64,000 nt of DNA from Heteronotia binoei (Eukaryota), in the NCBI RefSeq assembly GCF_032191835.1, contig NC_083237.1:8494001-8558000 (forward strand), written 5' to 3'. Of the stretch, positions 4,765 through 30,386 are shown one piece after another. How positions within the stretch are numbered: position 1 is the stretch's first letter; each line of letters starts with the position of its first letter. The notes under the pieces are model-generated. The model ran no database searches, had not been told where the DNA came from, and saw nothing but the letters and a program-made list of their open reading frames with translations. Position numbers and translations under genes: made by a program.

Positions 4765-4929
4765 CTGTAAACAGAGTTCATTTTTCATATCCAGAAGAAA
4801 TCTGAGTTGTTTAAATGCTTTTACCACAGTAGCAATCTATTTGTTTCATGTTTAACTTTCTCAATATAAAATATATATTTCCCTTGCTGTAGATACGTCC
4901 TCTTTTTCCCAAGTAGTGTTTATAACAGC

Positions 4930-7202: not shown

Positions 7203-8753
7203 TTAAACAGACTGTCTGGGATGGCAACTGAGAATGCCAATATGCATCTTGATATGAGTCAATTGAGATTCTGAATGCAAGAGATGATTCTGAAAATGCG
7301 GCTTGCAAATGTGGATTGTCCAAGGAACGTGTGAGAGATTAAAGTGACAGATCCCTGCCAGTCTCTTTCATCATCTTTCATTTCTCAAAAGAATAAGTGT
7401 TATTATAAGCAAAATAACTGGCTTATTCATTGATTTCTATCCCCTTCTGAAAAGCCATGGAGCTTTGGCCACCTGTAAAAATTACAGTGATTACAATCAT
7501 TCCAAGAAGAGATCATTATCTTTGCTAAATTTGTTTCTGGTCATCAGGAAAATACAGGAAAATTGCACAAAGTAATAGAATATATGGGTATAAACTAGGA
7601 ACTTGAGGAACACCTGATCTGCTGCAAAGATGAGTACAAGGTAGCTAAACAATTATGGAGGCCTAAAAAGTTTCAGTTGCACACTGGTAGGAAGAAGAAG
7701 AAGAAGAAGAAGAAGAGGAGGAGGAGGAGGAGGAGATTGTATTTATGCCCTACCCTTTGCTACTCAAAGGAATCTCAGAGCAGTTTACAATCTCCTTTCC
7801 CTTCCCCTCCCCACAACACACAACAGACACCCTGTGGGGTAGGTGGAGCTGAGAGAGCTCCGACAGAAACTGCTCTTGAGAGGAACAGCTCTGTGAGAGC
7901 TTGTGATTGACTCAAGGTGACATCAGCAGGTGCATATGGGGAGTGTATAATCAAACCTGGTTCTCCCAGATTAGAGTCCACACACTTAACAACTGCACCA
8001 TACTGGCTCTCACACATTTCCTGATGTCTCAAATATATATACCATTTTATCACAGCATTGGGCCATGGAATACTATGGTATAGCATGATATTCTCAGATC
8101 CCAGAAGCTAAGCAGGGTCAGTAGTTGGATTGGGGGCTACAAGGATGACTCTGCAGAAGAAAGCAATGACACATCATCTCACTTGTCTTGCAAGACCTTG
8201 TTGGAGGCATGAGAAGTCAATTGTGGTTCAACAGCATGTGGGTGCATATGGAGATATCTCACCAATGCAACAGTCCCTCAGGAAGAGGCTGAGGTCTTCC
8301 TAAGTAAAATGATTAACTGATAATAAAGATTTGTAAAAGTGACTGTGGAACCACAGAAATGAGTTATTCTTAATTAATTGAGTGGAAAAGATGCCCCTTT
8401 ATTCCAAAATTATAAATACAGAGGAAATATGGCAACTAAGTGTCAGTGAACATTTATGCTTTGCACAGTTCGATAAACTCCATTGTGGTATATATATACT
8501 CAGCAATCATGCAATCCAGTGAATAACTTATATGAATTAGCCTTATAATGGTTGTGTTTCCTAAAGATGCGTGGGAAGAATGGATACCACTGACACCTCT
8601 GATAGCCCAAGATGGGTCTTTTATTAGGATCATTGATTTTTTTGTATATACTATACATAAAACATATAATACAATAAGAACATAAGAGAAGCCATGTTGG
8701 ATCAGCCAAATGGCCCATCCAGTCCAATACTCTGTGTCACATTATGGTTTTTA

Positions 8754-8983
8754 TTAAATCTTCTTCCTGATTATCTGATTCCTGTTATTCAGCTCAGTTC
8801 TCAGAACAATGATATAACATTTTGTGCTTAACAAAAATTGCTAGAATCGAAGATGCGGTCAGTGAAAAAGAAAGAGCAATGGCAGTCAATTTCATCCCAA
8901 AAGGTTCTTGATAAGACAAAAAAAATTAAACTCTTGGGCATACATCAATCATTCTCTGTGCTCAGATACTGATCCTCTGGACA
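8754..8983 (-). pseudogene. Orphan V2R exon-6 relic (paralog of gene C exon 6) with an internal deletion of about 653 bp
   Basis: CPEDQYLSTEND*CMPKSL...SYQEP matches the start of exon 6 and ...LRTELNNRNQIIRKKI* matches its end. The two halves are fused at tttg (8821-8824). It has a stop, a +1 frameshift and no acceptor. The 3' flank aligns with 28945-29480. Confidence 0.9.
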
Positions 8984-9875
8984 GAAGAGGACTCAGAAGA
9001 GTGTTTTTGAAGAGTGTTTTGAAGGATACCACTGTGCTAGTCTTTCATTCCCAATGGGGTATCATGGGCTAAAGTTGACATGGTTCAGCGAGGGAGGGTA
9101 AGACAAAAAGTGGCACAGATACACTTGGGCCAGACTTAGACTTGGTGGAGACTCCTAAGAGAATGTATAGTTGCTGCTAGGGGCCACCTTGGGGGTGATT
9201 CAGAGGCCAATACTTCATGCACATGAGAGAGGAAATGAGGGGGAAATGAAGAAATACCAGCTTTGCATTAGTTATGTCACTTTTAGGAAACACTATAAGT
9301 CACATAAGGGATGTTGGGGATGTTCTAGATTTTGCCAGAATTCCCTCTTTTTTTGCAAAATGCTAGAGGGTCCCCTATGTCAATTTCAGTTTTGGCCAAG
9401 TTGGTGTGATGCCAGCATGCCAGGCCTGCTTCTCTATTCCACCAAGAAGTTTGGCCTTTCATCCTGGTAATCCTAGCTCAGAGTAGGCCAAAAGCCTTAT
9501 CTGTGGGGCCTAATCCCGAAGTCTCTGCTCTAGAAGACATTTTCACTAGTGAGTCCCTGGGACAGCTATCCCTCCCTCTCATAGGCTCAGACCCAGAAAA
9601 CCAGGTCCACAATCTCCCCTAAAGCCACCAACTTCTATGTGGAGTCTAGATCTCCAGACTAGAGAAATTGAATACCATAAAGAACAAAACAGAAGCTTCA
9701 GAAGGTTCACTCTACGGCTTACCATCCCTATAGCATTCCTGCCCTCCCCTCACCAAACTCCACCTTCACAGCCCAACTGAGAGTCTGCAACCCCATTCTC
9801 CCCCCACCTAGAAGAACAAATGGAGACAGCAGGTCTGTGTGGAGTAGCACATTGGTGAACAGCTAGGAATGCAGC

Positions 9876-10762
9876 TATAACAGCTCATCTTGCTGTCTAT
9901 CTTGTTCGCTTCTATTAGCAGCGTATGGCGACCTCAGCCCCTATTTCAGCCTCAGTCTTCCTTTTTAAATTTTACCTCACAACTACTGAACACCAGGGGT
10001 GGGTATAATATGGATTTCTTAATCTTAGTCTCTTCGGGGTTTTTGTTGTTTTCAGAGGGATGGACCCTCAATATGTAGGGGACTACAGCAGCTTTGATGG
10101 TTTTCCCAATATACAGGCACCAGAGAACTTAAAAGTAAACCACAGAAATTTATTTACACACACAGTCTTCAACTGGGGAATGGAGATATTTACATGGGCT
10201 AAATTGTATCTCCAATAGATAACAGTTTCTAACTAGTTCAGGCTTTTTTGTACAGATTTTACTTGTGTCTCTCAAGGTTCACAGTTCATATATTCCTCAC
10301 TCTCCAGCACTGTTTTAGGTTGGCCTCTTGGGCGTAATGTGCCAAGTCTCTTGAGTCGACTGGTGTCTCTACTCCCAGCCCTTCAGACTCCTCTAGACCC
10401 ACATCTTTCCCCTCATTCTCCTCTTTAGTTCTTAAGAGAAGTGTATATGGTTCTGTGACCTCTCAGGTCTTTCACTGTGACTCTCCTTCTGTCACACATA
10501 GCTCCTTGGCTGTCTCTACAGAGCTAGCAGTGAGCTTTACTTCACTCGAAGTCTCCCCTCAGCTCCTGTCTCAGTTCCTTCTCAAAGCCAACTGCTCTCC
10601 TCAGCAGTCTCCTTCAGACTGTTAGTCACTGACGACTCTCAGCTGTTAACTGTCAATCACACCTACTGAGAGTTCCGAGCACTCCGGCCCCCACCCTCAG
10701 ATCATCTGACTCAGGCTCTATGCGTCCTTCGTTTTTCTCTTAAGCCTTCTATTACCGTCACA
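9876..10762 (-). mobile_element. Probable solo LTR (887 bp) with 5-bp TSD
   Basis: Minus-strand termini TGTGACGG...GTTATA (expected ...TTACA). GCAGC duplicated at 9871-9875 and 10763-10767. AATAAA at 10154-10149. Confidence 0.65.
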
Positions 10763-10892
10763 GCAGCCCATGCCCAGGACCCAGTCAGATACCTGCTCTG
10801 GTATGTGTAGATATAGTTCCTTCCTGGATTGGGTCTCAATCAAACCCTAGCAGAAGATGGTAGAGTTTTGACTAGCTGGAGAAGGAAGCTTT

Positions 10893-11179
10893 GGGCATTT
10901 TCGCACTGACCTTACTGCCGAGCAACGTCCCTCTTCACCGCACAGTGTCTGCGCGGATTTTGCACCAATTGCTCCGCAGAACCCGGAAGAGCTGCAAAGT
11001 CCCGCGGCTTTTGCGTCGCAAATGTAAAGTTGGTTTTTGGCGAAAACCATTTGCAACGCAAAAGCCGTGGGACTTTGCGGCTCTTCCGGGTTCTGCGGAG
11101 CAATTGGTGCGAAATCCGCACAGATGCTGCGAGGTGAAGAGGGACGTCGCTCAGCAGTAAGGTCAGTATGAAAACGCCC
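10893..11179. mobile_element. Fold-back MITE, Harbinger/PIF-like (GGGC...GCCC termini, 3-bp TSD TTT)
   Basis: Near-perfect palindrome over about 287 bp. Confidence 0.85.
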
Positions 11180-11390
11180 TTTGACTCTTAAAAACTTAAG
11201 CCCTGAAAATCTTGCTGGTCTCTTTGGTGCTATTGGACTTGAATCTTGGACCAGTCCCATATAATCACCCTAAACTACCTGAAAGGCTGTGAAGGAAAAC
11301 TGGAGAAAAGGAGACCAATATAAAATAAGTGGGTCACTATTGTGCAGAAAGGCATGGTATAAAAGAAGTAAATATAACCAATGCTGCATT

Positions 11391-12292
11391 TCAATTCTTT
11401 TTCAATATTAACTGCTCTTTTCGGTTCAGATCAGGCCTCAGCAGAATAATGTAGCATTTTGAGGAAAATATACAAATCAGCAAACCAGAACTGGAGGCTA
11501 AGATTGAGAAGATCTCCACAGATACCATATACTTCCCTTTGCTGCTCAGATAAGCTGGAACAAAGGCTAACCAAACACTGCAAAACACCAGCATGCTGAA
11601 GGTGATGAACTTGGACTCATTGAAACTGTCTGGCAACTTCCTACCTAGGAAAGCTACAGTCAAGCTGATGAAGGACAGAAATCCCATGTAGCCCAGGACA
11701 ACATAAAACATGATAACTGACCCTTCGTTACATTCTGCTATGATCTCTTTAGCCATTGTTTGCATATCAAAATCTGGAAAGGGTGGTGAGGTTCCTAGCC
11801 ACACTGTACAAAGGGCTGCTTGAACAAGGGAACAGAAAAGCACACAGGTGGTAGCCATCCTTTTCCCCACCCATTTTCTCATGTAGGACCCGGGTTTGGT
11901 GGCCATGAAAGCTATCTCCACAGTGATGGTTTTGGCCAAGACACAAGAAACAGCCACTGAAAAGATGATGCTGAAAATGGATTGCCGGAGGAAGCAGGTC
12001 ACCTTGTTTGGTTGTCCAAGGAACAGCAAGGGACAGAGGAAGCAGAGGGTAAGGGAAACAAGAAGAGTGTAGGTGATATCCCAGTTGTTGGCTCTGACTA
12101 TGGGGGTATCTTTGTGCCTAATAAAAATTCCCAGAACCAAAGTTGTGATGAGGGAGAAAGAAAGCACAAAAGCAGTCAAACTGATCCCCAAAGGTTCTTC
12201 ATAAGACAGAAAGCTTATAATCTTGTGTATACATTGATCCTGGCCCATGCTTGGATATTGATCTTCTGGACATGTCATACAGTCATCTATAT
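11391..12292 (-). CDS. Vmn2r: V2R exon 6 (end of cysteine-rich domain plus 7TM), assigned to gene B
   Basis: 902 bp, ctcttcag|AT ... TGA. Encodes [12 protein letters not shown]...CFLRQ...CNEGS...[14 protein letters not shown]. Linked to exon 5 only across the N-gap at 12349-12667. Confidence 0.9.
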
Positions 12293-12348
12293 CTGAAGAG
12301 AGAGAGACAGAGAAAAGCAGGTCCCATCTCAGTTTAAATTCACAGGTG

Positions 12349-12667
12349 NNNNNNNNNNNNNNNNNNNNNNNNNNNNNNNNNNNNNNNNNNNNNNNNNNNN
12401 NNNNNNNNNNNNNNNNNNNNNNNNNNNNNNNNNNNNNNNNNNNNNNNNNNNNNNNNNNNNNNNNNNNNNNNNNNNNNNNNNNNNNNNNNNNNNNNNNNNN
12501 NNNNNNNNNNNNNNNNNNNNNNNNNNNNNNNNNNNNNNNNNNNNNNNNNNNNNNNNNNNNNNNNNNNNNNNNNNNNNNNNNNNNNNNNNNNNNNNNNNNN
12601 NNNNNNNNNNNNNNNNNNNNNNNNNNNNNNNNNNNNNNNNNNNNNNNNNNNNNNNNNNNNNNNNNNN
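12349..12667. other. Assembly gap (319 N)
   Basis: Run of N, 56 bp from the exon 6 acceptor. Confidence 1.
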
Positions 12668-12819
12668 AGATTACAAACCCTGATGGCATCTTTAAAGTGC
12701 TCTTATTCAGTCATTACATCACATCAGGGATGGGGGGATCCCCCCAGAAGGGGTGGCGAGAGAAAAAGGTGCCAGCATGGCATTTGTCACTGTCATTATA
12801 CAAAGACTTGACAGAACAT

Positions 12820-13040
12820 CTCTGCCTTACAGGCCCTGCGGAACTGTAAAAGATCCTGCAGGACCCTGATGTCTTCTGGCAGAGCGTTCCACCAAGTCGG
12901 GGCCAGGACTGAAAAAGTCCTGGCCCTTGTTGAGGACAGCTGGACTTCTTTCAGGCCACGATCACCACCAGATTTCGACCAATGGAGCATAACGCCCTTC
13001 CAGGGACATACTGGAGGAGGCAGTCCCGTTTGATGTTGAA
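12820..13040 (-). mobile_element. Older L2 ORF2 C-terminal fragment
   Basis: RARTFSVLAPTWWNALPEDIRVLQDLLQFRRACK is similar to the L2 C-terminus. Confidence 0.75.
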
Positions 13041-13348
13041 TTTCTCCATTTGATGTCAAAACTATTGAGTATATATGTTGGTTAATACAGCAAAGTTGCA
13101 CATCAAGGGAAAGGTGGCGTTACGTGCAGTAACCTATCTTCAAGCAATTCTATTGCAACCGATAATGGACTTACTTTTAAGGACACTTAATCATATTTAC
13201 AGGCAATTTGTAATAGGAAAAAAAAGATGCCTATCCAAAATACAATTCAATGGCTGCAATCACATACACTAAGAGATGCACGAGTGCCATGGACATGAGA
13301 TGCTCTTTGCAAAATGATTATCTGAATTTTCTGACTTGCATCACTTAC

Positions 13349-13475
13349 CCATCTGGTTTGCAATCTTCCCTTCTTGGCATGGAACACAATTATAACAGCA
13401 AAATTTCTCCCCTTCCTTCTTTTCCTTATGATAACCAGGCTGGCAATGGTCATTACAAACAGAATTAGGGGTCAC
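13349..13475 (-). CDS. Vmn2r: V2R gene B, exon 5
   Basis: 127 bp, aacag|GTG ... G|gtaagt. Encodes VTPNSVCNDHCQPGY...FCCYNCVPCQEGKIANQM. Confidence 0.93.
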
Positions 13476-14633
13476 CTGTTCAAAAACATAACAATTATAT
13501 TCATGTGCCAAATTATTTAATTCAATAATGAGCTGTTGAAATAGAACAAAGCCTAAAACAGCTAGCTGGTATCTTTTAGATTATGTCATGTATTATATTT
13601 TCTGTGTTTGATTGAAAATAGGTTGGAATGAGGAAAAAAAATAAGTACTAATTCATCATCTTTCCCAAACAGGAAAGCCAACTGGTGGTCAGTTGTAGTC
13701 CATGACAAAGGTGTAGCTCCACGACTGCTGGCTGTTTTAATGATGTATAGTTATAACAAATGTTTGATTTTAATTATATATTGTGAAATGTTAATTTAAA
13801 GTGTAATTTTATACTTTTATGTTAGTTTTATATATGTTGTAAGCCGCCCTGAGCCACTCGGTGGGAAGGGCGGGATATAAATCCCAGATAAATAAATAAA
13901 TAAAATAAAAATAAATAAAGGTTGTGATTTGTATTTATTCTTTGCCTTTTCTCACTGAGATTCAAGATCCCACAGTTTAAGTCAATACAACCAACAGGGT
14001 GAGGTGTCCAGTAAATAATGCAACAGGGTTTGGATTACAGAACTCTGAAAACAATCAAAATCTCAGAATAGATCTGAAACCAAGCTGAAACAATGCAGAA
14101 GTGTTAATTTGACACATTGGCCAATACAGAAAGTATATAGTAGAACTGTAGTTACAGGAACAGACAGTGCATATTATACAAAGTGGTATGGTCCACTGTC
14201 ATGGTCATTTTACTAAAGCATGTTTCTGAAACATTTCACTACAATATACCACTATTAGCTGTAAAAAAAAGCCCTATTGAGACATTCAGGTTTGCATAAT
14301 TTGCAGAAAGCCAGGAGAAAAAGTGACTTCTTTAACAAATCAATCAATCGTTTATTATGGCCAAAAGACCAGCAGAATTAGATACAGAAAAAAAAGACAA
14401 ATCAGACAGGACATTCTGTAAGGCAGAAATTTCTATTTTATCTGCAATTCATTTCCAACATTGCTGTTAAACACTTTAATGAAGCTGCATCTCTGTTCAG
14501 TTGTGCATTTCTGCACAAAAGGCCACAGTGACTTTAGCATAGAGCCTATCTATAAAAGAATGTCAGAATCTCTTCTTATGAACCATCAATGCAGAAAGAG
14601 GACTCACCCCTTAAAATGCACTAGAATCCATAC

Positions 14634-14861
14634 CTGGTTGAAAGTGTGAGGCCACACAATTTGGTCCTCATGAATGATGAATTTCTGCCCTTCAGGAGCA
14701 CTGGGATTCAGACTTCCCACTTTCACTTTCAAGAAGGAATTGTTTGAGAAGGTGACCAGATTCATTACATCAAATCTAGCTGGCATTTCCTTGTAACCAT
14801 TAAAATGTACTGTTTCGCCTGCTGAATTATTAAACACAATTCCTTGAAGGAATGGATGGAG
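14634..14861 (-). CDS. Vmn2r: V2R gene B, exon 4
   Basis: 228 bp, aaag|CTC ... CAG|gtatgg. Encodes LHPFLQGIVFNNSAGE...WPHTFNQ. Confidence 0.9.
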
Positions 14862-15720
14862 CTTTTTTTTTTTTGAAGAAAGAAAAGAATGACGGAAAAA
14901 ATATATCACAGTAACAATGTAAAATGCATTCAGTTGGGCAACTGTGTGGGTCTGAAGCAACAGAACAAAGTTTGAGTCCTGTGGCACTTTTAAAACCAAC
15001 AAGTTTAATTCTTGGTGCAAGCTCCCTTGTGCAGGCACACTTCTTCAGATACGCCGAAACAGACTTCTACAACCATTACATAAAGGTGGAGAAGGGGAGG
15101 AGGTTAGTTGCCAAAAAGAGCTTATGCATCTTGACTATAATCAAAGGAGGTGGTGACGGCTGCCAGCATAGAAAGCTTCAAGAGGGGATTGGAGAAGCAT
15201 ATGGAGCAGAGTCCATCAGTGGCTATTAGCCACAGCATAATTGATGGAACTCTCTGTCTGGGGCAGTGATGCTCTGTATTCTGGGTGCTTGGGAGGGGGG
15301 CAACAGTGGAAGAGCTTCTAATGTCCTGGCACCACTGATGGACCTCCTGATGGTACCTGGTTTTATTGGTCACTGTGTGACACAGAGTGTTGGAATTGGA
15401 TGGGCCATTGGCTTCTTATGTTCTTAAAGCATTGCTCTATTCACACTAGACAGAAACACATGAAAATAAGAAGAACCCTGAAGGATCAGATTAGTGGACC
15501 ATCTAATTCAGCATCCTTCCAGTTACTCTAGAGGGCCAACGTAGGGCTGGGAAGGACTTTCCCCTTATTGGCTCTGTATATGCAGGTTTCCTTTAGCCAC
15601 CATAGATTACATATGGGTTATTTGCCCAAAAGGAGAACAATACCAGACAGCCACCTTCTTTCATCACATAATTCTAAATTGTGGTTGTAGGTGTCAGGAG
15701 CACTGAAGCTATCCTATGAT

Positions 15721-15927
15721 CAGGGTTTCCTCTAAGCTGAGTTAGTGTGAGCTAGCTCACAGTTTTTTAGCCTCTGGGTCACACTTTTTTTGTCCCAGCT
15801 CAGGGAAAATGGCCCCAGCACAAATTAATTGATGCAGTAGTCAAATTGCTGGCTCACAGTTTTAATGCCAGTAGGTCATGGAGTAGAACGTTTGCTCACA
15901 AGATTCCACAGCTTAGAGGGAATATTG
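15721..15927. mobile_element. hAT-type MITE (TTCCCTCTAAGCTG-type TIRs) in gene B intron 3
   Basis: 8-bp TSD CCTATGAT/CCTATGGT. Absent in gene A. Related copy at 51605-51798 with TSD CCTGTCAC/CCTGTGAC. Confidence 0.8.
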
Positions 15928-16107
15928 CCTATGGTCCAGCTGGTGAGTTTCAAGTGTGCATGAGTGACATATCTGAAAGGAGATTATTTCAAGCCATAAA
16001 TATATGCTACATCTTTTCACTATTATTCATGGCAGAGGAAGTTTGAAATTATCTCAACCAAAACGTAACTTCATAACAGTAATAACAATTGATTGAGAAA
16101 GTACTAC

Positions 16108-16962
16108 CTGCCAAGGCTGAAGATCTTGAAATTCATCCCCCTTGGTATCCATTCTTGGTCTGCACTTGGATGTGGAAGCAGACATGGAATGCAAGGCATG
16201 TGCCACAGCATAGACAGCATTATAGATGCTATAGCTCTGGCCAGTCATGCTCATTTCAAATATTGGTCCAGGAAGGCTCTCCAGCCTCTCTTCCCCAGTA
16301 CATGTCGCATCGCTATTCTCTGGGTCCTCGGATTTTGGAAATGAACAGCCAAATGCTTGTTCCCAGAAGTACTTCAGAAAGCCATCTCCTTGTTTCCTAT
16401 AAGGTTTCACATTTTGAAGAAACTTCTGGAAACCTACAAGATTCTCTGAATGAGGTGTGAAGAAAATGGCACCTTGGTAGAATTCAAAATTCTCATTCCT
16501 CTGGAGGGATGTTACTAGGAAATCAACTTGGCCCACCAGAATCCACACTTTTCTAAGTGAGGGATTTTCCTCATCTCCAGCCCCTCCTATGGATATTAAT
16601 ATCATCAGCCAGTTAATGGTAGTAGGTCTACCATAAAGGATGATTGCACTTGCTTTGCTATGTTTGAAACATGTGTATGCTGTGAAGAACAGAGAACTGA
16701 AGTAATCCATTTCATTTTTCTGGTGATGGGATGCTATTCTTTCTATGAAAGCTAGACAGATTCCATTGGGGTTAAGTACTGACTCCAGACTATGCAAAAA
16801 GTGTTCTCCACTGTCATTATCAATAACAAAAAGCCCAACCCAAGTCCACTGGAAATGTTTAAGTAACCTCCTGATCTGCTGGACTTCATTTAGAACCATG
16901 TGGTAAAAGGAATGGGGTTGCCTCATCTCCTTCTTCTCTTGGGCAAACAACCCGTATGTGAA
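16108..16962 (-). CDS. Vmn2r: V2R gene B, exon 3
   Basis: 855 bp, open frame, ttttag|TTC ... CAG|gtagta. Encodes FTYGLF...WTWVG...FWEQAF...LQPWQ. Confidence 0.95.
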
Positions 16963-17124
16963 CTAAAAGAAAAGATACCAGATTAACAGAAATCTGATTA
17001 CGTGCATGCCTGTCCAGCCAACGAATACTTGCATGTTCTATGAGAATTGAAGCTGCTTCTTTCTGAATGTTCTGAGACTATTAACTTCCTTCAGTAATGT
17101 AGGACAAAGACAAGCACAACAACA

Positions 17125-19962: not shown

Positions 19963-20487
19963 TCTAAGCTAAGCATAGTTGGTACTTGGATGGGAGATCA
20001 CTGAGGAAGACTCTGCAGAGGCAAAGTCAAACCACCTCTGCTTCATCATTTGCCTTGAAAACCCTATGGGATGGTCATAAGTCAGTTGCAACTTGATGGC
20101 ACTTTATGCACGCAATAGAATCAACCCTAATTAACCCATGGAATTAAATTAACCCAGCTGCCCTGAGCCCAACTGGGGAGGGTGGGGTATAAATGCAAAA
20201 TAATAAATAAATAAATAAATTGAGGCTTTCTGAATCATTTCTATATAATTTCTTGCTCCCCGTAATACATTTGGCCATCATAAAATGGTTTCTCACCACC
20301 ACCACCTGGTATTTGAAAACAGAGATTTCATTAAGAGAAAAGAGATCTGTTTAGTAACTAGAAAAGACGCAACAAAAAATGACAAATAGTTGGGAGTGCA
20401 GGGAAAGAAAAACCTTAATTCCACATGTATCTCCTCTCATTTTGATTGGTCTAGCTCGCTGGAAGACACAGGAAAATGTTTTCTTAC

Positions 20488-20762
20488 ATTGTTGTGTCAA
20501 GAATGTCCTGGAAATGAAATTCGTTGAAAGAAAATTCAGAAAACCAGCTGGGAATCTGAGAGACAATTCCACCTATAATGAGGTTCCCTGACTGAGAACT
20601 CTCATGCAGGCCAGGTAGGAAACCTTTCAAGAGACACATATCTATTTTGCATGCCACAGGACGCAACCCAAGCAGCCATGTCACAACCAGCAACACCAAT
20701 GAGTGGTGAAGGTGATCTGTGGGTATAGATGTTCCTGAGCCCATCTGAAGCACCAGTCCCAT
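20488..20762 (-). CDS. Vmn2r: V2R gene B, exon 1
   Basis: Near-identical to gene A exon 1. Donor AT|gtaag, phase 2. Start codon uncertain. Confidence 0.8.
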
Positions 20763-21374
20763 TTAAACAGACTGTCTGGAATGGCAACTGAGAATGCCAG
20801 TATGCATCTTCATATGAGCCAACTGAGCTGCTGAATGACAGAAAAGATTTTGAAAACTCAGTTTGCAAATGTGGATTGTCCAAGTGACATATAAGAGATC
20901 AAGGTGACAGAGTCCTGCCTTTCATTTCTCAAAAGAATAGGAGGTGTTCACAGCAGTCATTTTGTAGAAAAATAGGTGGCAGAGCTCATCCAGGGCTTGT
21001 TACGCAGCTGCAATACTATTCAATGGAAAAGGAGGTGGAACTCGCAGAAGGAGGAGGTTGAACTCTCAGAAAGGTTCAGGAGCTGCACTCCTGTGAGCTC
21101 CCACTGAATCTGAGGCCTGGGTGGTTATATAAGCAATGCGGTTTGCTTATTCATTGATTTCTATCCCCCTCTGAAAAGCTGTGGAGTTTTAGCCACCTGT
21201 AAAAATTATAGTGATTTCAATCATTCCAGAAAGAGATCATTATCTTTGCTAAATTTGTCTCTGGTCATCATCAGCTGCAATTCAGGGAAAAAACAAAACT
21301 ATATTCACAGACCTCCTCTACTCCTTAGTGCAATATTATTAAACAACTGGAATGTGAACCAGAGGAAGCCCAGG

Positions 21375-24300
21375 TAGATAGATAGATAGATAGATAGATA
21401 ATTTTTATTTATATCCCGCCCTCCCCGCCGGGGCAGGCTCAGGGCGGCTAACAGTAACAGTAACATTCCATTGTATAAAAACAAGGTTACATTCAACATT
21501 AAAATTCTAATAGATTTAAAATTAATTACAGTTATAAAAGTGCTAATGCTATTGCTATTTGTTCTTTATTATGATGGCGGTATCATTAGTACTTAATTTT
21601 CTACATCATCGAAAGCCAGTCGGAAGAGGAAAGTCTTGCAGGCCCTGCGGAATTGTTCAAGATCCCGCAGGGCCCGCATTTCCTCTGGAAGTTGGTTCCA
21701 TAAGCTCGGGGCCACAGAGGAGAAGGCCCGATTGCGGGTGCATTGCAACTTCACCTCTCTTGGTCCGGGGATAGTCAGCAAGTTTTTTCCAGCTGACCTC
21801 AGTGCTCTCTGGGGTTCATATAGGGAGAGACGGTCCCTGAGGTAGACAGGTCCTCGACCATATAGGGCTTTAAAGGTAATGACCAGCACTTTGTAACGAA
21901 CCCGGTATATAACTGGCAGCCAGTGCAGCTCGCGCAGCCCAGGCTGTATGTGCTCCCATTTAGGGAGCCCCAACAGTAGCCTGGCCGCTGCGTTCTGCAC
22001 CAGCTGCAGCTTCCGGGTTCGGTACAGAGGCAGCCCCATGTAGAGGGCATTACAGTAATCCAGTCTCGAGGTGACCGTTGCGTGAAGTACCGTTGCCAGA
22101 TCTTGGCGCTCTAGGAAGGGAGCCAACTGCCTTGCCCGCCTCAGGTGGAAGAAGGCTGACTTGGCAGTGGCTGCAATCTGGGCCTCCATTGATAATGAAG
22201 GCTCCAGTAAAACTCCCAGACTCCTAACCCGGTGCGCCGCTTTCAGCGGCGCCCCGTCGAAGACCGGAAGAGGTGTTTCCCCTTCCCGGGCGCCCCGACC
22301 CAGACAAAGGACTTCTGTCTTCGCTGGGTTCAATTTCAGCCCGCTCCTCCTCAACCACATTGCCATATCCTGCAGGGCCCGGTCTAGATTCTCAGGGACG
22401 CAGTCAGGCCGGCCGTCCATTAGCAGATAGAGTTGGGTGTCATCTGCATATTGATGGCACCCAAGTCCGTATCTCCTGGCAATCTGGGCAAGAGGGCGCA
22501 TGTAGATATTGAATAATATTGGTGAGAGAACTGCCCCCTGAGGCACTCCACAGTCCAGTGTGCGCCTCCGGGACCGCTCGCCACCAATTGCCACCCTTTG
22601 TCCCCGATCCTCGAGGAAGGAGGAGAGCCATTGTAAGGCAGACCCCCTCACCCCTATATCGGCGAGGCGGCGGGTCAGTAGCCGATGGTCGACCGTGTCG
22701 AACGCGGCCGACAGGTCTAACAACATCAGCACCGCCACACCGCCCCGATCCAGATGCCGTTGGAGATCGTCTACCAGGGCGACCAGTACTGTCTCCGTCC
22801 CATAGCCCGGGCGAAAGCCGGACTGGCAAGGGTCTAGGATGGAAGCGTCATCCAGAAAGCTCTGCAACTGCGACGCCACTGCCCTCTCAATTATTTTACC
22901 TAAAAACGGTAAATTAGAGACCGGTCGGTAGTTTGCCAATTCGGCCGGATCTGCTGTAGTTTTTTTCAGGAGGGGTCGGACCAAAGCCTCTTTCAGGGAT
23001 GATGGAAAACGCCCCTCTGAGAGGGATCTATTTATGATGTCCCGTAAAGGACATTCAAGCTCCCTCAGGCAAGATTTAATTAGCCAGGAGGGGCATGGGT
23101 CCAGATCGCAAGTTGTAGGGCGCGCAGAGGAGAGGATTCCGTCAACTTCCTCCAGGCTGAGCGGGTCGAAATGATCCAGAGTTAAATCAGAAGACAGGCA
23201 AGGGGCCTCGGGCTCATGTACTGTATCTAAGGTGATGGGCAGGTCCTGGCGGAGCGACGTGATTTTGTCTGCAAAAAATTTCGCAAAAGCCTCACAGCCT
23301 ATTTCTAATTCTCTTACGTTTGGTCTGCCTTGGGGCAGAGTAGTTAAGTGTCCAATTATTTTGAATAATTGTGCCGGGCGCGAATTTGCAGACGCAATCT
23401 TGGCCGCAAAGTACTTCTTCTTTGCGGCCTTGACTGCCATCTCATACGACCTCATAAGCGTTCTGTAGGATGTTCTCGCCGCTTCGCCACGAGTGCGCCG
23501 CCACTGCCTCTCTAGTCGTCGGAGTCCTTGTTTCAACCGGCGTAGCTCCAGGGTATACCAAGGAGCCAGCCTTGAACGAGGGCGCAGAGGACGTCGGGGT
23601 GCGATCTCGTTGATTGCCCCAGATAGCCGGTCTTGCCAGGCATCAACCAGGGCGTCAAGGGAATCACAAGGGGGCCAAGGATCCCGAAGAGCCGTTTGGA
23701 ACCGTTCCGGGTCCATCAGGCTCCGCGGGCGAGCCAAAATAGGCTCTCCGCCCTTACAGGGTTGTGGTAGCGTCTCCATACGAGCCTTGAGGGCTAAGTG
23801 ATCCGACCATGGTATCGCCTCCGTTGCGATTTCGTTCACTTTAATCCCGGCCGCAAAGATCAGATCTAATGTGTGCCCCGCCTGATGCGTGGGAGTCGTA
23901 ACAAATTGGGAGAGTCCTAGTGTCGCCATGGAAGACACTAGGTCCATCGCCTGAGTGGAAGCCGCGTCATCGGCGTGGACATTGAAGTCACCCAGGACCA
24001 GAAGCCCCGGGCACTCCAACGCCCAGCCGGACACCGCCTCCATCAGGGATGGTAAGGCGCTGGCCGGTGCGTTAGGCGGACGGTACACCAGCCAGATCGC
24101 CAACCTCTCCCCGACATCCAACGCAAGGCCGACACATTCAACACCATCGATCTTTGGGGCCGGGAGGGCCCTGAAGGAGTAAGCCTCCCGTATGAATATC
24201 GCCACCCCGCCCCCCCGCCCGCTAATCCGCGACTGGTGGAAGACCGAGTAGCCCGGGGGGGTCATCTGGGAGAGTGCCATTGTCTCTCCCTCTTGAACCC

Positions 24301-24510
24301 AGGTCTCGGTCACGCAAGCCAGGTCTGCATCCTGCCGAAGCAGGAAGTCCTTAATGGTCTCGATCTTATTGTTTATAGACCTGGCGTTGCATAACACCAG
24401 TGTCGGACGCGGGCAATTTCTCTTGGTCCCCCTACTTGTCACCGTTGGGATGGGAAGTAGACTAGAAGGGGGCCGAGCACTGTTTTGTCTCTGTCTCCTG
24501 GTGCTCAATA
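21375..24510 (-). mobile_element. Young L2-clade LINE, 5'-truncated, with uninterrupted ORF2 (APE endonuclease plus RT, 21593-24508)
   Basis: 971-codon ORF with NARS, VTETW, GDFN, TLDL, SDH (endonuclease) and DLSAAFDTVDH, GVPQG, YADD (RT), plus the HWLPV C-terminal motif. L2-type 3' UTR with a (TATC)n tail. Rich in CpG. Confidence 0.95.
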
Positions 24511-26228
24511 CATAGAAGAGTGAGAAGTCATAGCATTAAATTTCAGATAAAGGGACAGGACATTCCCCCCCCCCCCTCCAGTATGTTAGCAACAGTAGAC
24601 ATGCCAATAATCTGGTAACTTTCCACTCAGCACTGATTTTTTTGTCACTCCACTAATCCTGACGCTCTAGGCAATCACCAAATATTTTTTTCCTTGGGGT
24701 TCAGTGAGCCCAGTTCTAAACATCTTTTCTGCACGAACACTGGTAACTTGATCAAGATCATAGAAAGCAGTCATGAACAGAATACCTGCTCGGAACCTCT
24801 ACTGATCAGTTCAAAGGGGCTTACTCCCAGGAAAAAGTTTTTACGATTGGTTTGATCAAAAAATCCATATCGGATGACCCAGTAGCAGTCCCTTTTATTG
24901 AGCTTTGACCTTTGATCCAGGAGTTAGAATCATAGAGCTGGAAGGGACCTCCAAGGTCAGTTCTGTGATTCAAAGACCCCCAACCTATTGGGATTCCAGG
25001 AATGAGCTTCCCTGAGGTGGAATCCCCAGAGGCTTGCCCGCATTACCAAGAGCCCCATTAATCTTTGCTTCTACATGACAGTGGAGGTACCTTTCCCACC
25101 ATGAGGTAACAGAATATAGGGCTGTACACCAGGTGCTTTAAGAACACCTTGTCTGCTGCAAAGAGTAGCCTAAGGTAGCTAGACAATTAAGGAGGTCTAT
25201 AAGGGCTCAACTGCACACTGCCAGTTATTTTACCATATTTGTAATAGTGATTGTGCAACCACAGAAATGAGCTATTCTTCTCATCAGCTCTGGAGAATCT
25301 TTTCTTGAATAGCTGGTCCTCAATGTTTGGCTCAAACATATTAACAGCTAGGGTCTCATTTCTTCTGTATGCAACCATATTGGGGGGGGGGGGTGTATGC
25401 AAATATATATGTAGTATTTGTATCCTTGCATTGAGACATGGGAAACTATAGTATAGCCTAATTTGTCAGATCCGGGAAGCTAAGCAGGGTTAGTAGTTGG
25501 ATTGTGGACTCCCTGGAAGACTCTGTAGAAGAAGGCAATGGCACATCACCTCACTTACCTTGTAAGATCTTGTTGAGATCATAAGTCAGTTGTGATTCAA
25601 CAGCATGTGCGTGCATAAGGTATTCCACAATTTATAAGATGCAACAATCACTCAGGAATATGCTGAGGGTCTTCCTTAGTAAAAGTATAAAATGATACTA
25701 ATACAGATTTGTAATAGTGATTGTGCAACCACAGAAATGAGCTATTCTTCTCATCAACTCTGAAGGATCTTTTCTTGAATAGCTGGTCCTCAATGTTTGG
25801 CTCAAGTATATTAACAGCTAGGGTCTCATTTCTTCTGTATGCAAGAACCTGGAAATCTACGTCTTGTGGCACAAGCAACCATGGGATTACATCTTGGCGA
25901 AATTTACTGACAACGTCAAATCTCCCGAAAAACTAAATTTGTCCTTTAATTTCACTCCCATATGACTCCCTATCCTAGAGTACTTAGCAAGACAACAGGA
26001 ATGCCCTAAAATAGTCAATGACTTGTGCCTATGGTAATTTTTTTTAGTTTTTTATTAGGTCACTTACATGATTAATGTCTAAGTTCAAATGCTTTTCCTG
26101 TATGCCTTTATGTGTGCTATACTTTTCTTGCTTTTTTCCCCCTACTGTTGCTGATAACATGCAAAATCACTCAAAGGTTTGTTCTGTATCAGAGCTTTTT
26201 ACAAATGATCAATAAAATGTTAATTGAC

Positions 26229-28913
26229 CCCAATTGAAAAAATAGAAATTGAAGCAGCAATCAATGTGATGAAGAATGATAAAGCTCCCGGGCCAGACGG
26301 CTATACAGCTAAATATTTTAAAACTTTTAAAGATGAATTAATACCAAAATTACAGAAGCTGATGAATGTAATAAGAGCTAAAGGGAAGGTACCAAATACA
26401 TGGAAGGAAGCTGTTATTTCTTTGATACCTAAAGAAGAAAGAGACGTCACAAATGTGAAAAATTATAGACCAATTTCACTTTTGAACAATGATTATAAAA
26501 TATTTACAAGAATTCTGGCGGAACGACTTAAGCAATATCTGATAAATTTTATAAAGGAGGACCAAGCTGGTTTTCTTCCCAAAAGACAAATAAGAGATAA
26601 TATTAGAACTGTTGTAAATATTGTAGAATACTATGAAAGACATCCAGAAAAGGAAGTAGCACTATTTTTTGCGGATGCAGAAAAAGCATTTGACAATTTA
26701 AATTGGGACTTCATGTTTGCAGTGATGGAAAAAATGGAGCTTGGAGAAAGTTTTATAAGAATGATAAAGGCAATATATTTTGAACAAAGGGCAAGGTTGT
26801 GCATCAATGCAGATCTTACAGACGAAATGAAAATTAGTAAAGGTACTAGACAAGGCTGCCCGCTTTCGCCATTGTTGTTCATAATGACTCTTGAAATTTT
26901 ACTGATGCAGATCCAAGATGAAAAAGATTTAGAAGGACTACAAATAAAAGGGTATACCTATAAATATAGAGCATTTGCGGATGATATAATGTTTATAAAT
27001 GAAAACCCCTTACAAGCTACACCGTTGTTGCTAACGAGAATACAAGAGTTTGGGGAGTTGGCGGGACTGTACATAAACAAAGAAAAATCAAAAATCTTAT
27101 GTAAGAATATGCAGAAAAATAGACAACAAGAACTACAAAGACTAACGGGTTGTGAAGTTACCTCTAAGGTAAAATACCTAGGGGTAGAGATAACAATGAA
27201 AAATATTGATCTGTTTAGGAACAACTATGAAAAGCTCTGGCGTAAAATAGAAGAAGATATGCTAAAATGGAACAAGCTCAATTTGTCATTGTTGGGCAGA
27301 ATAGCTGCAGTAAAAATGAATATCTTACCAAGGATTATGTATTTGTTTCAAACCATCCCCATTGTGAAAGATGTTAAACAATTTGATAAATGGAGAAGAA
27401 AAATTTCGGAATTTGTGTGGGCCGGGAGGAAACCTAGAATTAAAATGAAAGTCCTGATAGATGCAAAAGAGAGAGGTGGGTTTCAATTACCAGATTTGAA
27501 ACTGTATCATGAAGCAATTTGTCTAGTATGGTTGAAAGAATGGATAATGCTATTAAATAAAAAACTTCTAGTGTTAGAAGGCCATGGAAAAAAATTCGGC
27601 TGGCATGCCTACTTGTATTATGGGAAAAAGAAGATGGACGGTCTTTTCTCTCACCACTATATAAGGAGCAGCTTACTAAATGTGTGGATAAAGTACAAGA
27701 AATATGGCAATGAGAGAAGACCTTTGTGGATAGTGCCGGCTGAAGTGATAAAGTTAACGGCCAAAACAGTAAAGGAAAAACAACTATCATACAACCAACT
27801 ACTAAAAATACAAAGTTGGAAAATAGAACTGAAAACGGCAGAAGAATTGAATCATAAATATGATTGGTTTCAAATGCAACAAATAAAAAGCTTGATGGAG
27901 AATGATATCAAAGCTGAAGGAATAAGGAAAGAGCAAACAGAAATGGAAAGAGTTCTGCTTGGAGATAACGAGAAATTAATTTCAAAAGTGTACAAATTAC
28001 TTTTACAATGGACTACAGAAGATGAAGTAGTGAAATCTCAAATGATAAAATGGGCAATTAATGTAAATAAAGAAATAAAGATGGAATCTTGGGAATTTTG
28101 TGGAAAAACTCTATGAAACTCGCAACATGTCATAGTATTAAAGAGAACTGTTTTAAGATGATGTATAGATGGTATATGACTCCAAAAAAATTAGCAAAAA
28201 TGAACAATAAGATGCCAGATAGGTGCTGGAAATGTAAAAAGCATGAAGGTTCTTTCTACCATATGTGGTGGACTTGTGAAAGAGCTAAAATGTTTTGGCA
28301 GATGATTCAACAAGAGATATCTAAGATCCTGGGATATGAATTTAACAAAGAAGCAGAGACTTCTCTGCTGGGATTACAAATGGAAAAATTTCCAAAAGAA
28401 GATAGAACTTTAATATGGTACTTGCTCTCAGCTGCTAGGACATTGTATGCACAGTTGTGGAAGCAAGAAAAAATACCAGAAAAATGGGATTGGACTATAA
28501 AAGTTATGTCATGGAGTGAAATGGACAAATTAACAAGAAAACTAAGAGACTGCGATTTAGAACTTTTTAATCGGGAGTGGAAGAAATTCAGAAGATATGT
28601 AGAAAAAGAGTGGAAGATAAAAGGGCATTGGACAATTTTTGATGATTAAGATTTTTAAGATAAGAATATAACTTTTGAAGGGGGGATCTTTTTCTTTATT
28701 AATTTTTGTTTTTTCTTGATAGTTAAAGGTACCTTTAATATCTGTTTTTTTTTAAAAAAATAACACTGGCGGGGGTCAAGCATTGGGGGGAGGGGTGGGA
28801 GAAAAGTAAGATGTGGGGTAGAATGATGTTTTTTTTCTATCTTAAGCTTTTTATAAGTTGTAGATATAGTTCTACTACCATATGTTACTAATAAAATTGT
28901 TTATACCAAAAAA
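26229..28913 (+). mobile_element. L1-clade LINE, 5'-truncated (RT plus C-terminal zinc knuckle), one frameshift
   Basis: KAPGPDG, YRPISLLN, DAEKAFD, GTRQGCPLSP, FADD and CWKC...HMWWTC motifs. AATAAA near 28890 and a short A-tail. 18-bp TSD AATAAAATGTTAATTGAC at 26211-26228 and 28914-28931. Confidence 0.95.
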
Positions 28914-29230
28914 AATAAAATGTTAATTGACAAAAGAAAAAGAAACAGAAATGAGCTATTCTTGATTCAGTCATTCCGTGCAAAAGATGCTCCTTTATCA
29001 GGAATTATAAATGGGACTGCAAAGGAAATACGGCAAATAAATATCAGAGGACATTTATGGCTTGCACAGTTTGCTAAACCCCATTGTGGTATGTGGTTAA
29101 TTTAATAAAAAACTGATCCAGAAGCAACACAATTAAAATGGAGGAGTGTCATTAACATTTTGCATTCTAAATAAAGATAATCAGCAATCATGCAATCCAA
29201 AGAATAATTTATATGAATCAGCCATATAGT

Positions 29231-29346
29231 CAGGGCTTTTATTGAGCAGGAATGCACAGAAACGCAGTTCCAGCTAGCTTGGCATCAGGGGGTGTGGCCT
29301 AATATGCAGATGAGTTCTGCTGGGCTTTTTCTACCAACCCCCCCTG
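29231..29346. mobile_element. hAT-type MITE downstream of gene C
   Basis: CAGGGCTTTT...CCCCCTG with a perfect 8-bp TSD CATATAGT. Absent from the paralogous flank at about 8540. Related copy at about 54803-54906. Confidence 0.8.
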
Positions 29347-29484
29347 CATATAGTGGTTATGTTTCTCTAATATGTGTGAGAAGAATAGACGGCACTGACA
29401 CCTCTGATAGTCCAAGATGGCTCTTTAATTAGGTTTATTGATATTTTTTGTATATAAGCATACATAAAACATAGAATGGTTTTA

Positions 29485-30386
29485 TTAAATATTCCTCCTG
29501 ATTATCTGATGCTTGTTATTCAGCTCAGGTCTCAGAAGAATAATATGGCATTTTGGGAAAAAGATACAAGTCAATAACCCAGCACTGGATGCCAAGATCG
29601 AGAAGACTTCCACAGCTACCATGTATTTCCCTTTGGTGCTCAGATAGGTTGGAATGAATGACAACCAAACACTGCAGAACACCAACATACTGAAGGTGAT
29701 GAACTTGGCTTCATTGAAGCTGTCTGGCAAATTTCTGGCTAGGAAAGCCACAGTCAAGCTTATGATGGACAGAATTCCCATATAGCCCAAGGAAATATAA
29801 AATAGAATGATGGATCCTTCATTGCACTGGACTATGATCTCCCTAGTCAGGGATTGTGTGTCAATATCTGGGAATGGAGGGGAGGTTACTAGCCACACTA
29901 GACAAATGGCTGCTTCTATATGGAAACAGGAGAGGACAATAGTGTTGGCCAGTCTTTTCCCCACCCACTTCCTCATGTTGGATCCTGGGATGGCAGTCAT
30001 GAAAGCTACAACCACCGTGATAGTTTTGGCCAATACACAAGAAACAGCCACTGAGAAAATGATACTGAAGGCGGATTGTTGGATGAAACAGGTCATCTTC
30101 CTGGGATGTCCAATAAAGAGCAAAGAACAGAGGAAGCAAAGCAAGAGGGAAATGAGGAGATAGTAGGTGATATCACGGTTGTTGGCCTTAACTAAGGGGG
30201 TATCTTTGTGCTTAATAAAAATTGCTAGAATCAAAGATGTGGTCAGTAAAAAAGAAAGAGCAATGGCAGTCAAACTGATTCCTAAAGGTTCTTGATAAGA
30301 CAGAAAGTTTAAACTCTTGGGTATACACCGATCACGTTCTGTGCTTGGATACTGATCCTCTGAGCACTTGATACAGTCTTCCATAT
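29485..30386 (-). CDS. Vmn2r: V2R gene C, exon 6 (7TM)
   Basis: 902 bp, ctcctcag|AT ... TAA. Class C 7TM motifs present. Exons sum to 2625 nt, giving 874 aa in an open frame. Confidence 0.96.

What the first reader, a model, noticed from the sequence alone, without database searches (positions are those of the whole stretch)
7500..30386. Readable segmental duplication that left an orphan, deleted exon 6 upstream of gene A
The block upstream of gene A (7500-8983) aligns with the block upstream of gene B (about 21230, 25100-25750, 28945-30360), ending in a copy of gene C exon 6. The A-side copy (8754-8983) starts about 20 nt into the exon with no acceptor, has a TGA and a +1 frameshift, and has lost about 653 bp between two TTTG microhomologies (29552-29555 and 30205-30208 in gene C). 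So the duplicated unit ran from inside exon 6 of the upstream neighbour through the A/B gene, with a breakpoint at about 8984. This is a direct record of V2R birth-and-death by unequal exchange.
Basis: partly seen in the sequence, partly recalled or inferred. Interest (0 to 1): 0.7.

Follow-up and report, generated by a model that had tools for sequence, protein, structure and literature searches.

The report
Duplication scar in gecko V2R array
A gecko pheromone-receptor (V2R) gene was copied together with its upstream spacer and a piece of its upstream neighbour's last exon, and that decayed 230-base piece still marks one edge of the copy; it is a clean but ordinary footprint of how such gene families grow.

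Summary
All V2R-type genes here lie on the minus strand. Block 713-8983 (gene A exons 1-5 plus 1.8 kb upstream) is collinear with 13296-30366 (gene B exons 1-5, the B-C spacer and most of gene C exon 6). The A-side block ends in a 230-nt relic (8983-8754) of C exon 6. The relic starts 20 nt into the exon without its acceptor. It carries a TGA, one extra T and a 653-bp deletion between two CAAA (TTTG on +) microhomologies. Introns and spacer share one neutral divergence (K2P 0.19). The relic groups with C exon 6 (bootstrap 100) on a 3.2-fold longer branch. The extra B-side length is later transposon insertion. No exons 1-5 of the relic exist in 8984-11390.

Two caveats apply. The junction joins unrelated sequence, so homologous unequal crossing-over is not shown. 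A/B homology stops 53 nt into intron 5, and gene A's exon 6 is off-window, so the far end of the duplicated unit is unseen. The N gap (12349-12667) lies in B intron 5, so the tandem order depends on that scaffold join. No reads or sister genomes could be consulted. This is a new example of a known kind (compare the human RCCX module). Interest is low to moderate.

The parts
8754..8983 (-). Orphan relic of gene C exon 6. It corresponds to exon nt 21-182 and 836-902. It has no acceptor, a TGA at 8947-8945, an extra T in the run 8925-8918, and a 653-bp deletion junction (CAAA) at 8824-8821. The old stop codon TAA is at 8756-8754.
8984..11390 (-). 3' flank of gene B running up to the junction. 8984-10888 is unique within the window. 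10893-11179 is a palindromic MITE-like repeat. There are no V2R exon remnants here, and one AATAAA/ATTAAA motif at 10154.
8671..8743 (.). A-side-only insertion about 10 nt downstream of the relic's stop codon. It contains a 68-nt 5'-terminal fragment (8674-8741) that is 95.6% identical to the interspersed repeat at 19206-19273.
7203..8670 (-). A-side copy of the C-B spacer (upstream region of gene A). It is collinear with 20763-21270, 25106-25749 and 28945-29477, with K2P 0.19. The stretch 7309-7574 is more conserved (90-93% identity).
892..7202 (-). Gene A exons 1-5: 7202-6928, 4764-4473, 3069-2218, 1476-1249 and 1018-892. All are open with intact splice sites. Exon 6 lies off the window to the left.
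713..891 (-). Start of gene A intron 5. It has 20 nt homologous to B, then a 134-nt insert (865-732) copied from A intron 3 (1817-1684, 97.8% identical), then 16 nt homologous to B (728-713). A/B homology ends here.
11391..12292 (-). Gene B exon 6 (7TM domain, intact, 902 nt).
12349..12667 (.). Assembly gap inside gene B intron 5, 56 nt upstream of the exon 6 acceptor. It was neither filled nor looked up.
13349..20762 (-). Gene B exons 1-5: 20762-20488, 18588-18297, 16962-16108, 14861-14634 and 13475-13349. All are open.
21271..25105 (-). B-side-only LINE insertion. Its 971-aa ORF (21596-24508) has Exo_endo_phos and RVT_1 domains. Gene A has about 25 nt at the corresponding site.
25750..28944 (+). 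B-side-only LINE insertion with an RVT_1 ORF at 26224-28113 and an A-rich 3' tail. It is flanked by an 18-nt target-site duplication, CAGAAATGAGCTATTCTT, at 25732-25749 and 28945-28962. The empty site is preserved on the A side at 8353-8370.
29485..30386 (-). Gene C exon 6 (intact 7TM exon), the parent of the relic. The microhomologies are at 30205-30208 and 29552-29555.

Best explanation
Gene A and gene B are the two products of one old tandem segmental duplication inside a minus-strand V2R array. One edge of the duplicated unit fell about 20 nt inside the 7TM exon (exon 6) of the upstream neighbour, gene C. From there the unit ran through the short C-B spacer and the ancestral A/B gene. It most likely continued to a point about 2.4 kb past that gene's exon 6.

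Joining the two units placed B's 3' flank (..8984) against a headless copy of C exon 6 (8983..). That piece had no acceptor and no upstream exons, so it decayed neutrally. It gained a stop codon, a 1-nt insertion, a 653-bp deletion between 4-nt microhomologies and a repeat-fragment insertion next to it. Both receptor copies stayed under purifying selection. LINEs and other repeats later swelled the B-side spacer from about 1.6 kb to 8.7 kb.

The join itself was non-homologous (end-joining or a replication template switch). It was not a crossover between aligned paralogues.

Shown: the collinearity, the position of the edge, the parentage and decay of the relic, equal neutral divergence across the block, and the later insertions. 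Inferred: that the copies arose in tandem in a single event, that the unit included B's exon 6 and 3' flank, and the mechanism of the join.
For: - Collinear chain in direct orientation from 872-8983 to 13329-30366, extended to 713/13296 by a 16-nt exact match.
- Neutral divergence is uniform: introns K2P 0.190 and spacer 0.193. The relic against C exon 6 gives 0.143, as expected if only the relic side drifts freely.
- In the exon-6 tree the relic pairs with C at 100% ultrafast bootstrap. Branch lengths are 0.122 for the relic and 0.038 for C.
- The relic's defects were read directly from the sequence.
- No V2R exon 1-5 similarity in 8984-11390 or 12293-13348 by tblastn at E up to 10, and no DNA similarity to the gene C body.
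- The 3.2-kb B-side LINE has an 18-nt target-site duplication, and the empty site is kept on the A side.
- Gene A exons 1-5 have no stop and no frameshift. dN/dS for A against B is 0.37. At the noncoding indel rate, 17.5 frameshifting indels would be expected in both lineages together, giving P(0) about 1.6e-4 for one lineage alone. Gene A has therefore been maintained, and so it should possess a 7TM exon.
- Gene B is complete and in frame across the gap.
Against: - A/B homology stops in intron 5 at A 713 / B 13296. A 1-712 and B 12668-13295 align no better than shuffled sequence. The tandem model therefore needs independent insertions or deletions there, or needs the homologous part to lie in the gap. 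Intron 2 shows the same kind of mutual replacement over about 1.1 kb, and B 12826-12905 is repeat-derived, so this is plausible but not shown.
- Gene A's exon 6 and 3' flank are off-window.
- Adjacency of contig 1-12348 and contig 12668+ rests on a scaffold join.
- No sequencing run was listed for a read check.
- The present edge at 8984 could have been trimmed by later deletion.
Confidence: 0.7

Rival explanations
1. A larger block was duplicated, at least C plus B, giving C-B-C'-A. A later deletion then removed C' exons 1-5, its introns and the first 20 nt of its exon 6. On this view 8984 is a deletion scar and not the duplication junction.
For: - Deletions do occur here: 653 bp were lost inside the relic itself.
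- Large indels are common along the A/B chain.
- The present-day structure would look identical under this model.
Against: - It needs two events where one is enough.
- Nothing in 8984-11390 resembles C's introns, its exons or its upstream spacer at the expected 81-83% identity. The only hit to the D-C spacer is a MITE-like repeat at about 72%, which matches another copy of the same repeat better (85%).
Confidence: 0.12
2. The copied unit really ended in intron 5, running from C exon 6 nt 21 to about 53 nt past exon 5. Gene A would then be a mosaic: its ligand-binding exons 1-5 derive from B's lineage and are spliced to a 7TM exon of different origin. Alternatively, gene A is a headpiece without a 7TM exon.
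For: - Both ends of detectable homology lie inside the window. The left end, at A 713 / B 13296, sits just after the exon 5 boundary between the extracellular and 7TM modules.
- Exon 5 is the most diverged exon (82.7% identity).
- A 134-nt piece of intron 3 is copied next to that boundary, which hints at local rearrangement.
Against: - The junction at 8984 still needs B's 3' flank to be joined to C exon 6, which a simple tandem duplication explains by itself. This rival needs a second junction.
- Mutual loss of alignment over about 1 kb is also seen in intron 2, inside the undisputed block.
- B's intron 5 contains repeat-derived sequence and a gap.
- A copy without a 7TM exon contradicts the strong evidence that gene A is maintained by selection.
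Confidence: 0.12
3. The arrangement is an assembly or scaffolding artefact. The contig 1-12348 would be misplaced or misjoined, so the apparent tandem arrangement, or the junction itself, would not be real.
For: - A scaffold gap (12349-12667) separates the A-side contig from the B/C contig.
- No public run was listed to check read support.
- Earlier notes on this assembly mention a possible misjoin elsewhere (unchecked).
Against: - The junction at 8984 and the deletion junction at 8821-8824 both lie inside gap-free sequence.
- The copies differ by 13-19%, so they are not collapsed or split haplotypes.
- The scaffold join gives gene B a correctly oriented, in-frame exon 6 at an intron length like gene C's.
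- Even if the contig were misplaced, the relic, spacer and gene A would still be a copy of C exon 6, spacer and gene B.
Confidence: 0.05

Closest known systems
Human RCCX module (STK19-C4-CYP21-TNX) tandem duplication, with the truncated junction copies STK19B and TNXA
   Same: A tandem segmental duplication whose edges fall inside flanking genes. It leaves headless or truncated partial copies at the junction. STK19B is only 914 bases of the 3' end of STK19. TNXA is a truncated pseudogene with a 120-bp frameshifting deletion (PMC8362596). Here a headless 3' exon copy carries a 653-bp deletion.
   Different: - RCCX copies are 96-98% identical and still recombine by NAHR. The gecko copies are 81-83% identical in neutral DNA, so the event is old and fixed.
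- Here both full-length duplicates appear to stay functional.
- Only one end of the unit is visible here.
Expansion of V2R and other chemoreceptor families by tandem duplication (birth-and-death evolution)
   Same: A tandem array of CaSR-like class C receptors in one orientation, with paralogues of graded age (exon 6 about 77% identical between older pairs). Tandem duplication is regarded as the main way chemoreceptor copy number rises (PMC9018814). Large V2R repertoires in squamates are described in PMC3590772.
   Different: Published repertoire studies count genes and pseudogenes. In the papers I searched I found no base-level description of a duplication junction in a squamate V2R cluster. 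That search was limited and is not proof of absence.
Microhomology-associated deletion (alt-end-joining or replication slippage)
   Same: The 653-bp loss lies between two identical 4-nt CAAA motifs, and one copy is retained.
   Different: Four nucleotides of microhomology arise by chance in roughly 2% of random deletions (my own estimate). The mechanism is therefore suggested, not proven.

Membership tests
V2R-type class C GPCR genes (vomeronasal type 2 receptor / OlfC family) | Domain architecture: ANF_receptor (Venus flytrap), NCD3G cysteine-rich domain and 7tm_3 | tested here: met
   Pfam hits: 7tm_3 E=1e-81 to 1e-84 for the four exon 6 copies; ANF_receptor for exons 2 and 3; NCD3G E about 1e-14 for exon 5 of A, B and C. 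The nearest solved relative is the calcium-sensing receptor, E=8e-80.
V2R-type class C GPCR genes (vomeronasal type 2 receptor / OlfC family) | Six-exon gene structure with the whole 7TM domain in the last exon (the expected structure is from my own knowledge) | tested here: met
   The gene B model has exons of 275, 292, 855, 228, 127 and 902 nt with GT-AG introns. It gives one open frame of 892 codons plus a stop codon. The joined model was translated only in local scripts and was not sent to any search.
V2R-type class C GPCR genes (vomeronasal type 2 receptor / OlfC family) | Phylogenetic placement inside the V2R clade and not with CaSR, T1R or GPRC6A; expression in the vomeronasal organ | not tested
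   No tree against outgroups was made and no RNA run was listed. The V2R label rests on the multicopy tandem array of CaSR-like genes and on earlier scan notes (unchecked).
Tandem segmental duplication | Two collinear, same-orientation blocks with one level of neutral divergence | tested here: met
   Nineteen collinear blocks. Intron K2P is 0.190 and spacer K2P is 0.193.
Tandem segmental duplication | A head-to-tail junction: the end of unit 1 abuts the start of unit 2, and the end of unit 2 repeats the end of unit 1 | tested here: inconclusive
   The start of unit 2 (8983, equal to C exon 6 nt 21) abuts B's 3' flank (8984), as the model predicts. The end of unit 2 lies off-window. Homology is already lost in intron 5. 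The units are separated by a scaffold gap.
Non-allelic homologous recombination (classical unequal crossing-over) | The two parental sequences are homologous at the crossover point, giving a hybrid junction inside a repeat or paralogue | tested here: not met
   8984-10888 has no similarity to C intron 5, to the start of C exon 6 or to anything else in the window. A crossover between the exon 6 copies would have produced a chimeric full-length exon, not a headless copy 2.4 kb downstream of an intact one. The second parental sequence (gene A's 3' flank) could not be seen.

The most novel reading that the evidence does not exclude
Gene A might be a modular recombinant. The copied block would truly end just after exon 5, so the ligand-binding exons 1-5 from B's lineage were grafted onto a 7TM exon of another lineage. 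The clustered small rearrangements near both block ends would then be footprints of one replication-based, template-switching event. These are the 653-bp microhomology deletion, the 68-nt repeat-fragment filler and the 134-nt copy of intron 3 inside intron 5. That would show V2R diversity arising by shuffling the head and 7TM modules, not only by whole-gene duplication.
Probability: 0.12. Interest if true: 0.55.

Novelty: new member of a known kind. Interest (0 to 1): 0.25.

Why it matters
The locus gives a base-level example of how a squamate V2R cluster gained a gene. One edge of the duplicated unit can be read directly. Its position shows that the join was not a crossover between aligned paralogues. 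The dead relic also serves as an internal neutral clock beside two copies that stayed under selection.

This is useful for annotation. The 230-nt relic should be called a pseudogene fragment and should not seed a gene model. It is also useful as a marker for tracing this duplication in other geckos. It does not change what is known about how receptor families evolve.

Tried and rejected
- Hidden exons 1-5 of the orphan. tblastn of all A, B and C exon peptides against 7203-11390 and 12293-13348 at E up to 10 found only the exon 6 pieces. blastn with word size 7 on 8984-11390 found only a MITE-like repeat.
- Continuation of A/B homology into intron 5. blastn with word size 7 and a Smith-Waterman comparison against shuffles gave a score of 16 against a shuffle maximum of 15, and the only match was the 16-nt identity.
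- Read support and expression. The look-up of sequencing runs listed no run, so read laying could not be used.
- Pfam on ten further ORFs in the non-homologous stretches gave nothing, so those stretches could not be assigned to transposon proteins.
- The large protein searches were not used. The family is not in doubt and the operators had flagged their cost.
- The joined spliced models were used only inside local scripts. All searches were done exon by exon, by reference.
- The N gaps were not filled or looked up.
- Haplotype duplication was rejected because the copies differ by 13-19%.
Full report
**Layout**

The window has two assembly gaps, at 12349-12667 and 52831-52992. ORF listing and Pfam scans show that all receptor genes lie on the minus strand.
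- Four long ORFs carry a complete 7tm_3 domain (E=1e-81 to 1e-84). They are the last exons of gene B (12292-11391), gene C (30386-29485), gene D (about 43975-43074) and gene E (about 62600-61688).
- ANF_receptor exons lie at higher coordinates than each of these.
- Exon 5 of A, B and C matches NCD3G.
- The nearest solved relative of C exon 6 is the calcium-sensing receptor, E=8e-80.

These are therefore CaSR-like class C receptors in a one-orientation tandem array, that is, V2R-type genes. Earlier scan notes call the genome a gecko, and one names Heteronotia binoei. I did not check the species.

Gene models were built from paralogue alignments and splice sites.
- Gene A exons 1-5: 7202-6928, 4764-4473, 3069-2218, 1476-1249 and 1018-892. 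Its exon 6 lies to the left of the window.
- Gene B: 20762-20488, 18588-18297, 16962-16108, 14861-14634, 13475-13349 and 12292-11391. This is one open frame of 892 codons plus a stop codon.
- Gene C exons 2-6 were mapped the same way, and its exon 1 is near 38648-38478.

The joined coding sequences were translated only inside local scripts. Every search was done exon by exon, by reference.

**The gap, tested first**

The gap at 12349-12667 sits in intron 5 of gene B, 56 nt upstream of the exon 6 acceptor. To its right lie exon 5, its GT donor and intron sequence that includes a repeat-derived stretch. To its left lie a pyrimidine tract, the AG and exon 6.

Exon 5 ends with one spare base and exon 6 starts with two, so the frame is kept across the gap. 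The assembled intron is 1056 nt, against 1023 nt in gene C.

The join is therefore biologically coherent, but continuity cannot be proven. No base of the relic or of the junction depends on the gap. What does depend on it is the claim that the A-side contig lies directly downstream of gene B. The gap was neither filled nor looked up.

**Checking the observation**

Self-BLAST gives a collinear chain in direct orientation, from 872-8983 to 13329-30366. A further 16-nt exact match extends it to 713/13296.

Read on the minus strand, C exon 6 begins at 30386, directly after the AG at 30388-30387. The A-side copy matches only from 8983, which corresponds to 30366, so the first 20 nt and the acceptor are missing. 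It has the following defects:
- a TGA at 8947-8945 where C has CGG;
- eight T's at 8925-8918 where C has seven bases, which is a +1 shift;
- a jump from C 30205 to C 29555 across a single CAAA at 8824-8821.

Gene C has CAAA at both 30208-30205 and 29555-29552, so 653 bp are missing between 4-nt microhomologies (TTTG on the + strand). The old stop codon is at 8756-8754. The relic is thus 8983-8754, 230 nt long, and has stops in all three frames.

**What the relic is**

On the 229 shared columns the relic is 86.5% identical to C exon 6. It is only 72.5%, 71.6% and 65.5% identical to the exon 6 of B, D and E.

A maximum-likelihood tree pairs it with C at 100% ultrafast bootstrap. The branch lengths are 0.122 for the relic and 0.038 for C. 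That pattern fits one copy drifting freely while the other stays constrained.

Neutral divergence is the same throughout the duplicated block: introns give K2P 0.190 (2164 sites) and the spacer upstream of exon 1 gives 0.193 (1080 sites). The relic against C gives 0.143, close to the sum of half the neutral value and half the exon value. This fits a single event that copied the exon-6 piece, the spacer and the gene together.

**Why the B side is twice as long**

- The segment 25750-28944 is a plus-strand LINE with an RVT_1 ORF and an A-rich tail. It is flanked by an 18-nt target-site duplication, and the A side keeps the unoccupied site at 8353-8370.
- The segment 21271-25105 is a minus-strand LINE with an intact 971-aa endonuclease and reverse-transcriptase ORF. 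Gene A has about 25 nt at that site.
- The segment 19211-19965 is another interspersed repeat, with a clean empty site in A.
- The A side has insertions of its own, for example 5528-6353 and 7687-8029.

Before these insertions, gene C's stop codon lay only about 1.6 kb from the start codon of the A/B gene.

The stretch 8984-11390 contains no V2R exon similarity by tblastn at E up to 10. Its only DNA similarity to the rest of the window is a 287-bp palindromic MITE-like repeat at 10893-11179. The readable intron beside the gap is equally empty of exon similarity. The orphan is therefore truly headless.

**State of genes A and B**

Across exons 1-5 the two genes are 93.1% identical, with dS 0.148, dN 0.055 and dN/dS 0.37. 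There are no stops and only one in-frame 3-nt indel.

In 3047 aligned noncoding bases there are 30 indels whose length is not a multiple of three. At that rate 17.5 such indels would be expected in 1774 coding bases. The probability of none, even if only one lineage were drifting, is about 1.6e-4. Gene A has therefore been kept by selection, so it should own a 7TM exon to the left of the window. This is an inference.

**Mechanism**

The simplest history is a tandem duplication. Its unit ran from C exon 6 nt 21 through the spacer and the ancestral A/B gene, to a point about 2.4 kb beyond that gene's exon 6. Unit 1 would then be 30366..8984 and unit 2 would be 8983..off-window.

The join is non-homologous. 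The bases to the right of 8984 resemble neither C intron 5 nor the start of the exon. A crossover between aligned exon 6 copies would have produced one chimeric exon, not an intact exon followed 2.4 kb later by a headless one. 'Unequal exchange' therefore holds only in the loose sense. End-joining or a replication template switch is more likely. Any junction microhomology cannot be read without gene A's 3' flank.

**Caveats**

- A/B homology stops at A 713 / B 13296, about 53 nt (in B) into intron 5. In A that stretch is also interrupted by a 134-nt copy of A's own intron 3 (865-732 against 1817-1684, 97.8% identical).
- Under the tandem model the two introns should align. They could fail to align because of independent insertions, as in intron 2, where about 1.1 kb on each side is mutually unalignable inside the undisputed block. 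B's intron 5 also contains repeat-derived sequence and the gap.
- Alternatively, the block really ends there and gene A is a mosaic.
- The edge at 8984 may have been trimmed by later deletion. A larger C-B block duplication followed by loss of most of C' would look the same today.
- I rank the single tandem event at about 0.7. Each of the two biological rivals is at about 0.12, and an assembly artefact is at about 0.05.

**What could not be done**

- No sequencing run was listed for 6400-12340, so there is no read support or expression data.
- The findings index holds nothing on the left flank.

**Comparison with what is known**

The closest textbook analogue is the human RCCX module. Its tandem duplication left STK19B, which is only the last 914 bases of STK19, and TNXA, a truncated copy with a 120-bp frameshifting deletion (PMC8362596).

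Tandem duplication is the accepted way chemoreceptor families expand (PMC9018814), and squamates have large V2R repertoires (PMC3590772). This locus is a new, well-preserved instance of a known kind. K2P 0.19 implies an old event, probably tens of millions of years, although I have no calibrated rate.

**Verdict**

Interest is 0.25.

Noticed in passing
window 6928-7202 vs 20488-20762; 4473-4764 vs 18297-18588; 2285-2634 vs about 16175-16525: A/B identity is mosaic. Exon 1 is 98-100% identical, exon 2 is 93-99% and the 3' half of exon 3 is 96-99%. The identity drops sharply to 78-85% in the flanking introns. The 5' half of exon 3 (83-92%) and exon 5 (82.7%) sit at or near the neutral level. This looks like exon-limited gene conversion or very uneven constraint.
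   Followed up: partly
window 732-865 and 1684-1817: A 134-nt piece of gene A intron 3 is repeated at 97.8% identity inside intron 5, 26 nt after exon 5 and in the same orientation. It is much younger than the A/B duplication. It is either a small dispersed duplication or a local assembly quirk.
   Followed up: no
window 10893-11179 and 46375-46661 (weaker matches at 39919-40211): A palindromic repeat of about 287 bp that is 84% self-complementary, present in at least two copies at 85% identity. It looks like a MITE-type element.
   Followed up: no
window 7309-7574 vs 20850-21270: The 100-370 nt upstream of the A and B start codons stay 90-93% identical, while the surrounding spacer is 76-80%. 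This is a candidate shared promoter. On the B side the LINE at 21271 inserted immediately beyond it.
   Followed up: no
window 25234-25374 and 25704-25844: A 141-nt segment spanning the LINE insertion boundary (43 nt of host sequence plus the first 95 nt or so of the insert) is duplicated 470 nt away at 95.7% identity. This is a secondary local duplication that arose after the insertion.
   Followed up: partly
window 8977-8994 (minus strand): The junction happens to create a pyrimidine-rich tract followed by AG (TCCTCTTCTGTCCAG) at the start of the relic. This is a possible cryptic acceptor. There is no evidence that it is used, and the relic has stops in all frames.
   Followed up: no
window 19207-19963, 55393-56141, 44959-45414, 4930-5240, 8674-8741: A family of interspersed repeats about 755 bp long has copies 88-98% identical to each other. 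It has therefore been active since the A/B duplication. Short 5'-end fragments of it lie in gene A intron 1 and right after the relic's stop codon.
   Followed up: partly
window 59264-59810, 44696-45025, 62960-63364: Three tandem repeats are visible in the self-comparison: units of about 270 bp (96% identity), about 67 bp (96%) and about 200 bp (90%).
   Followed up: no
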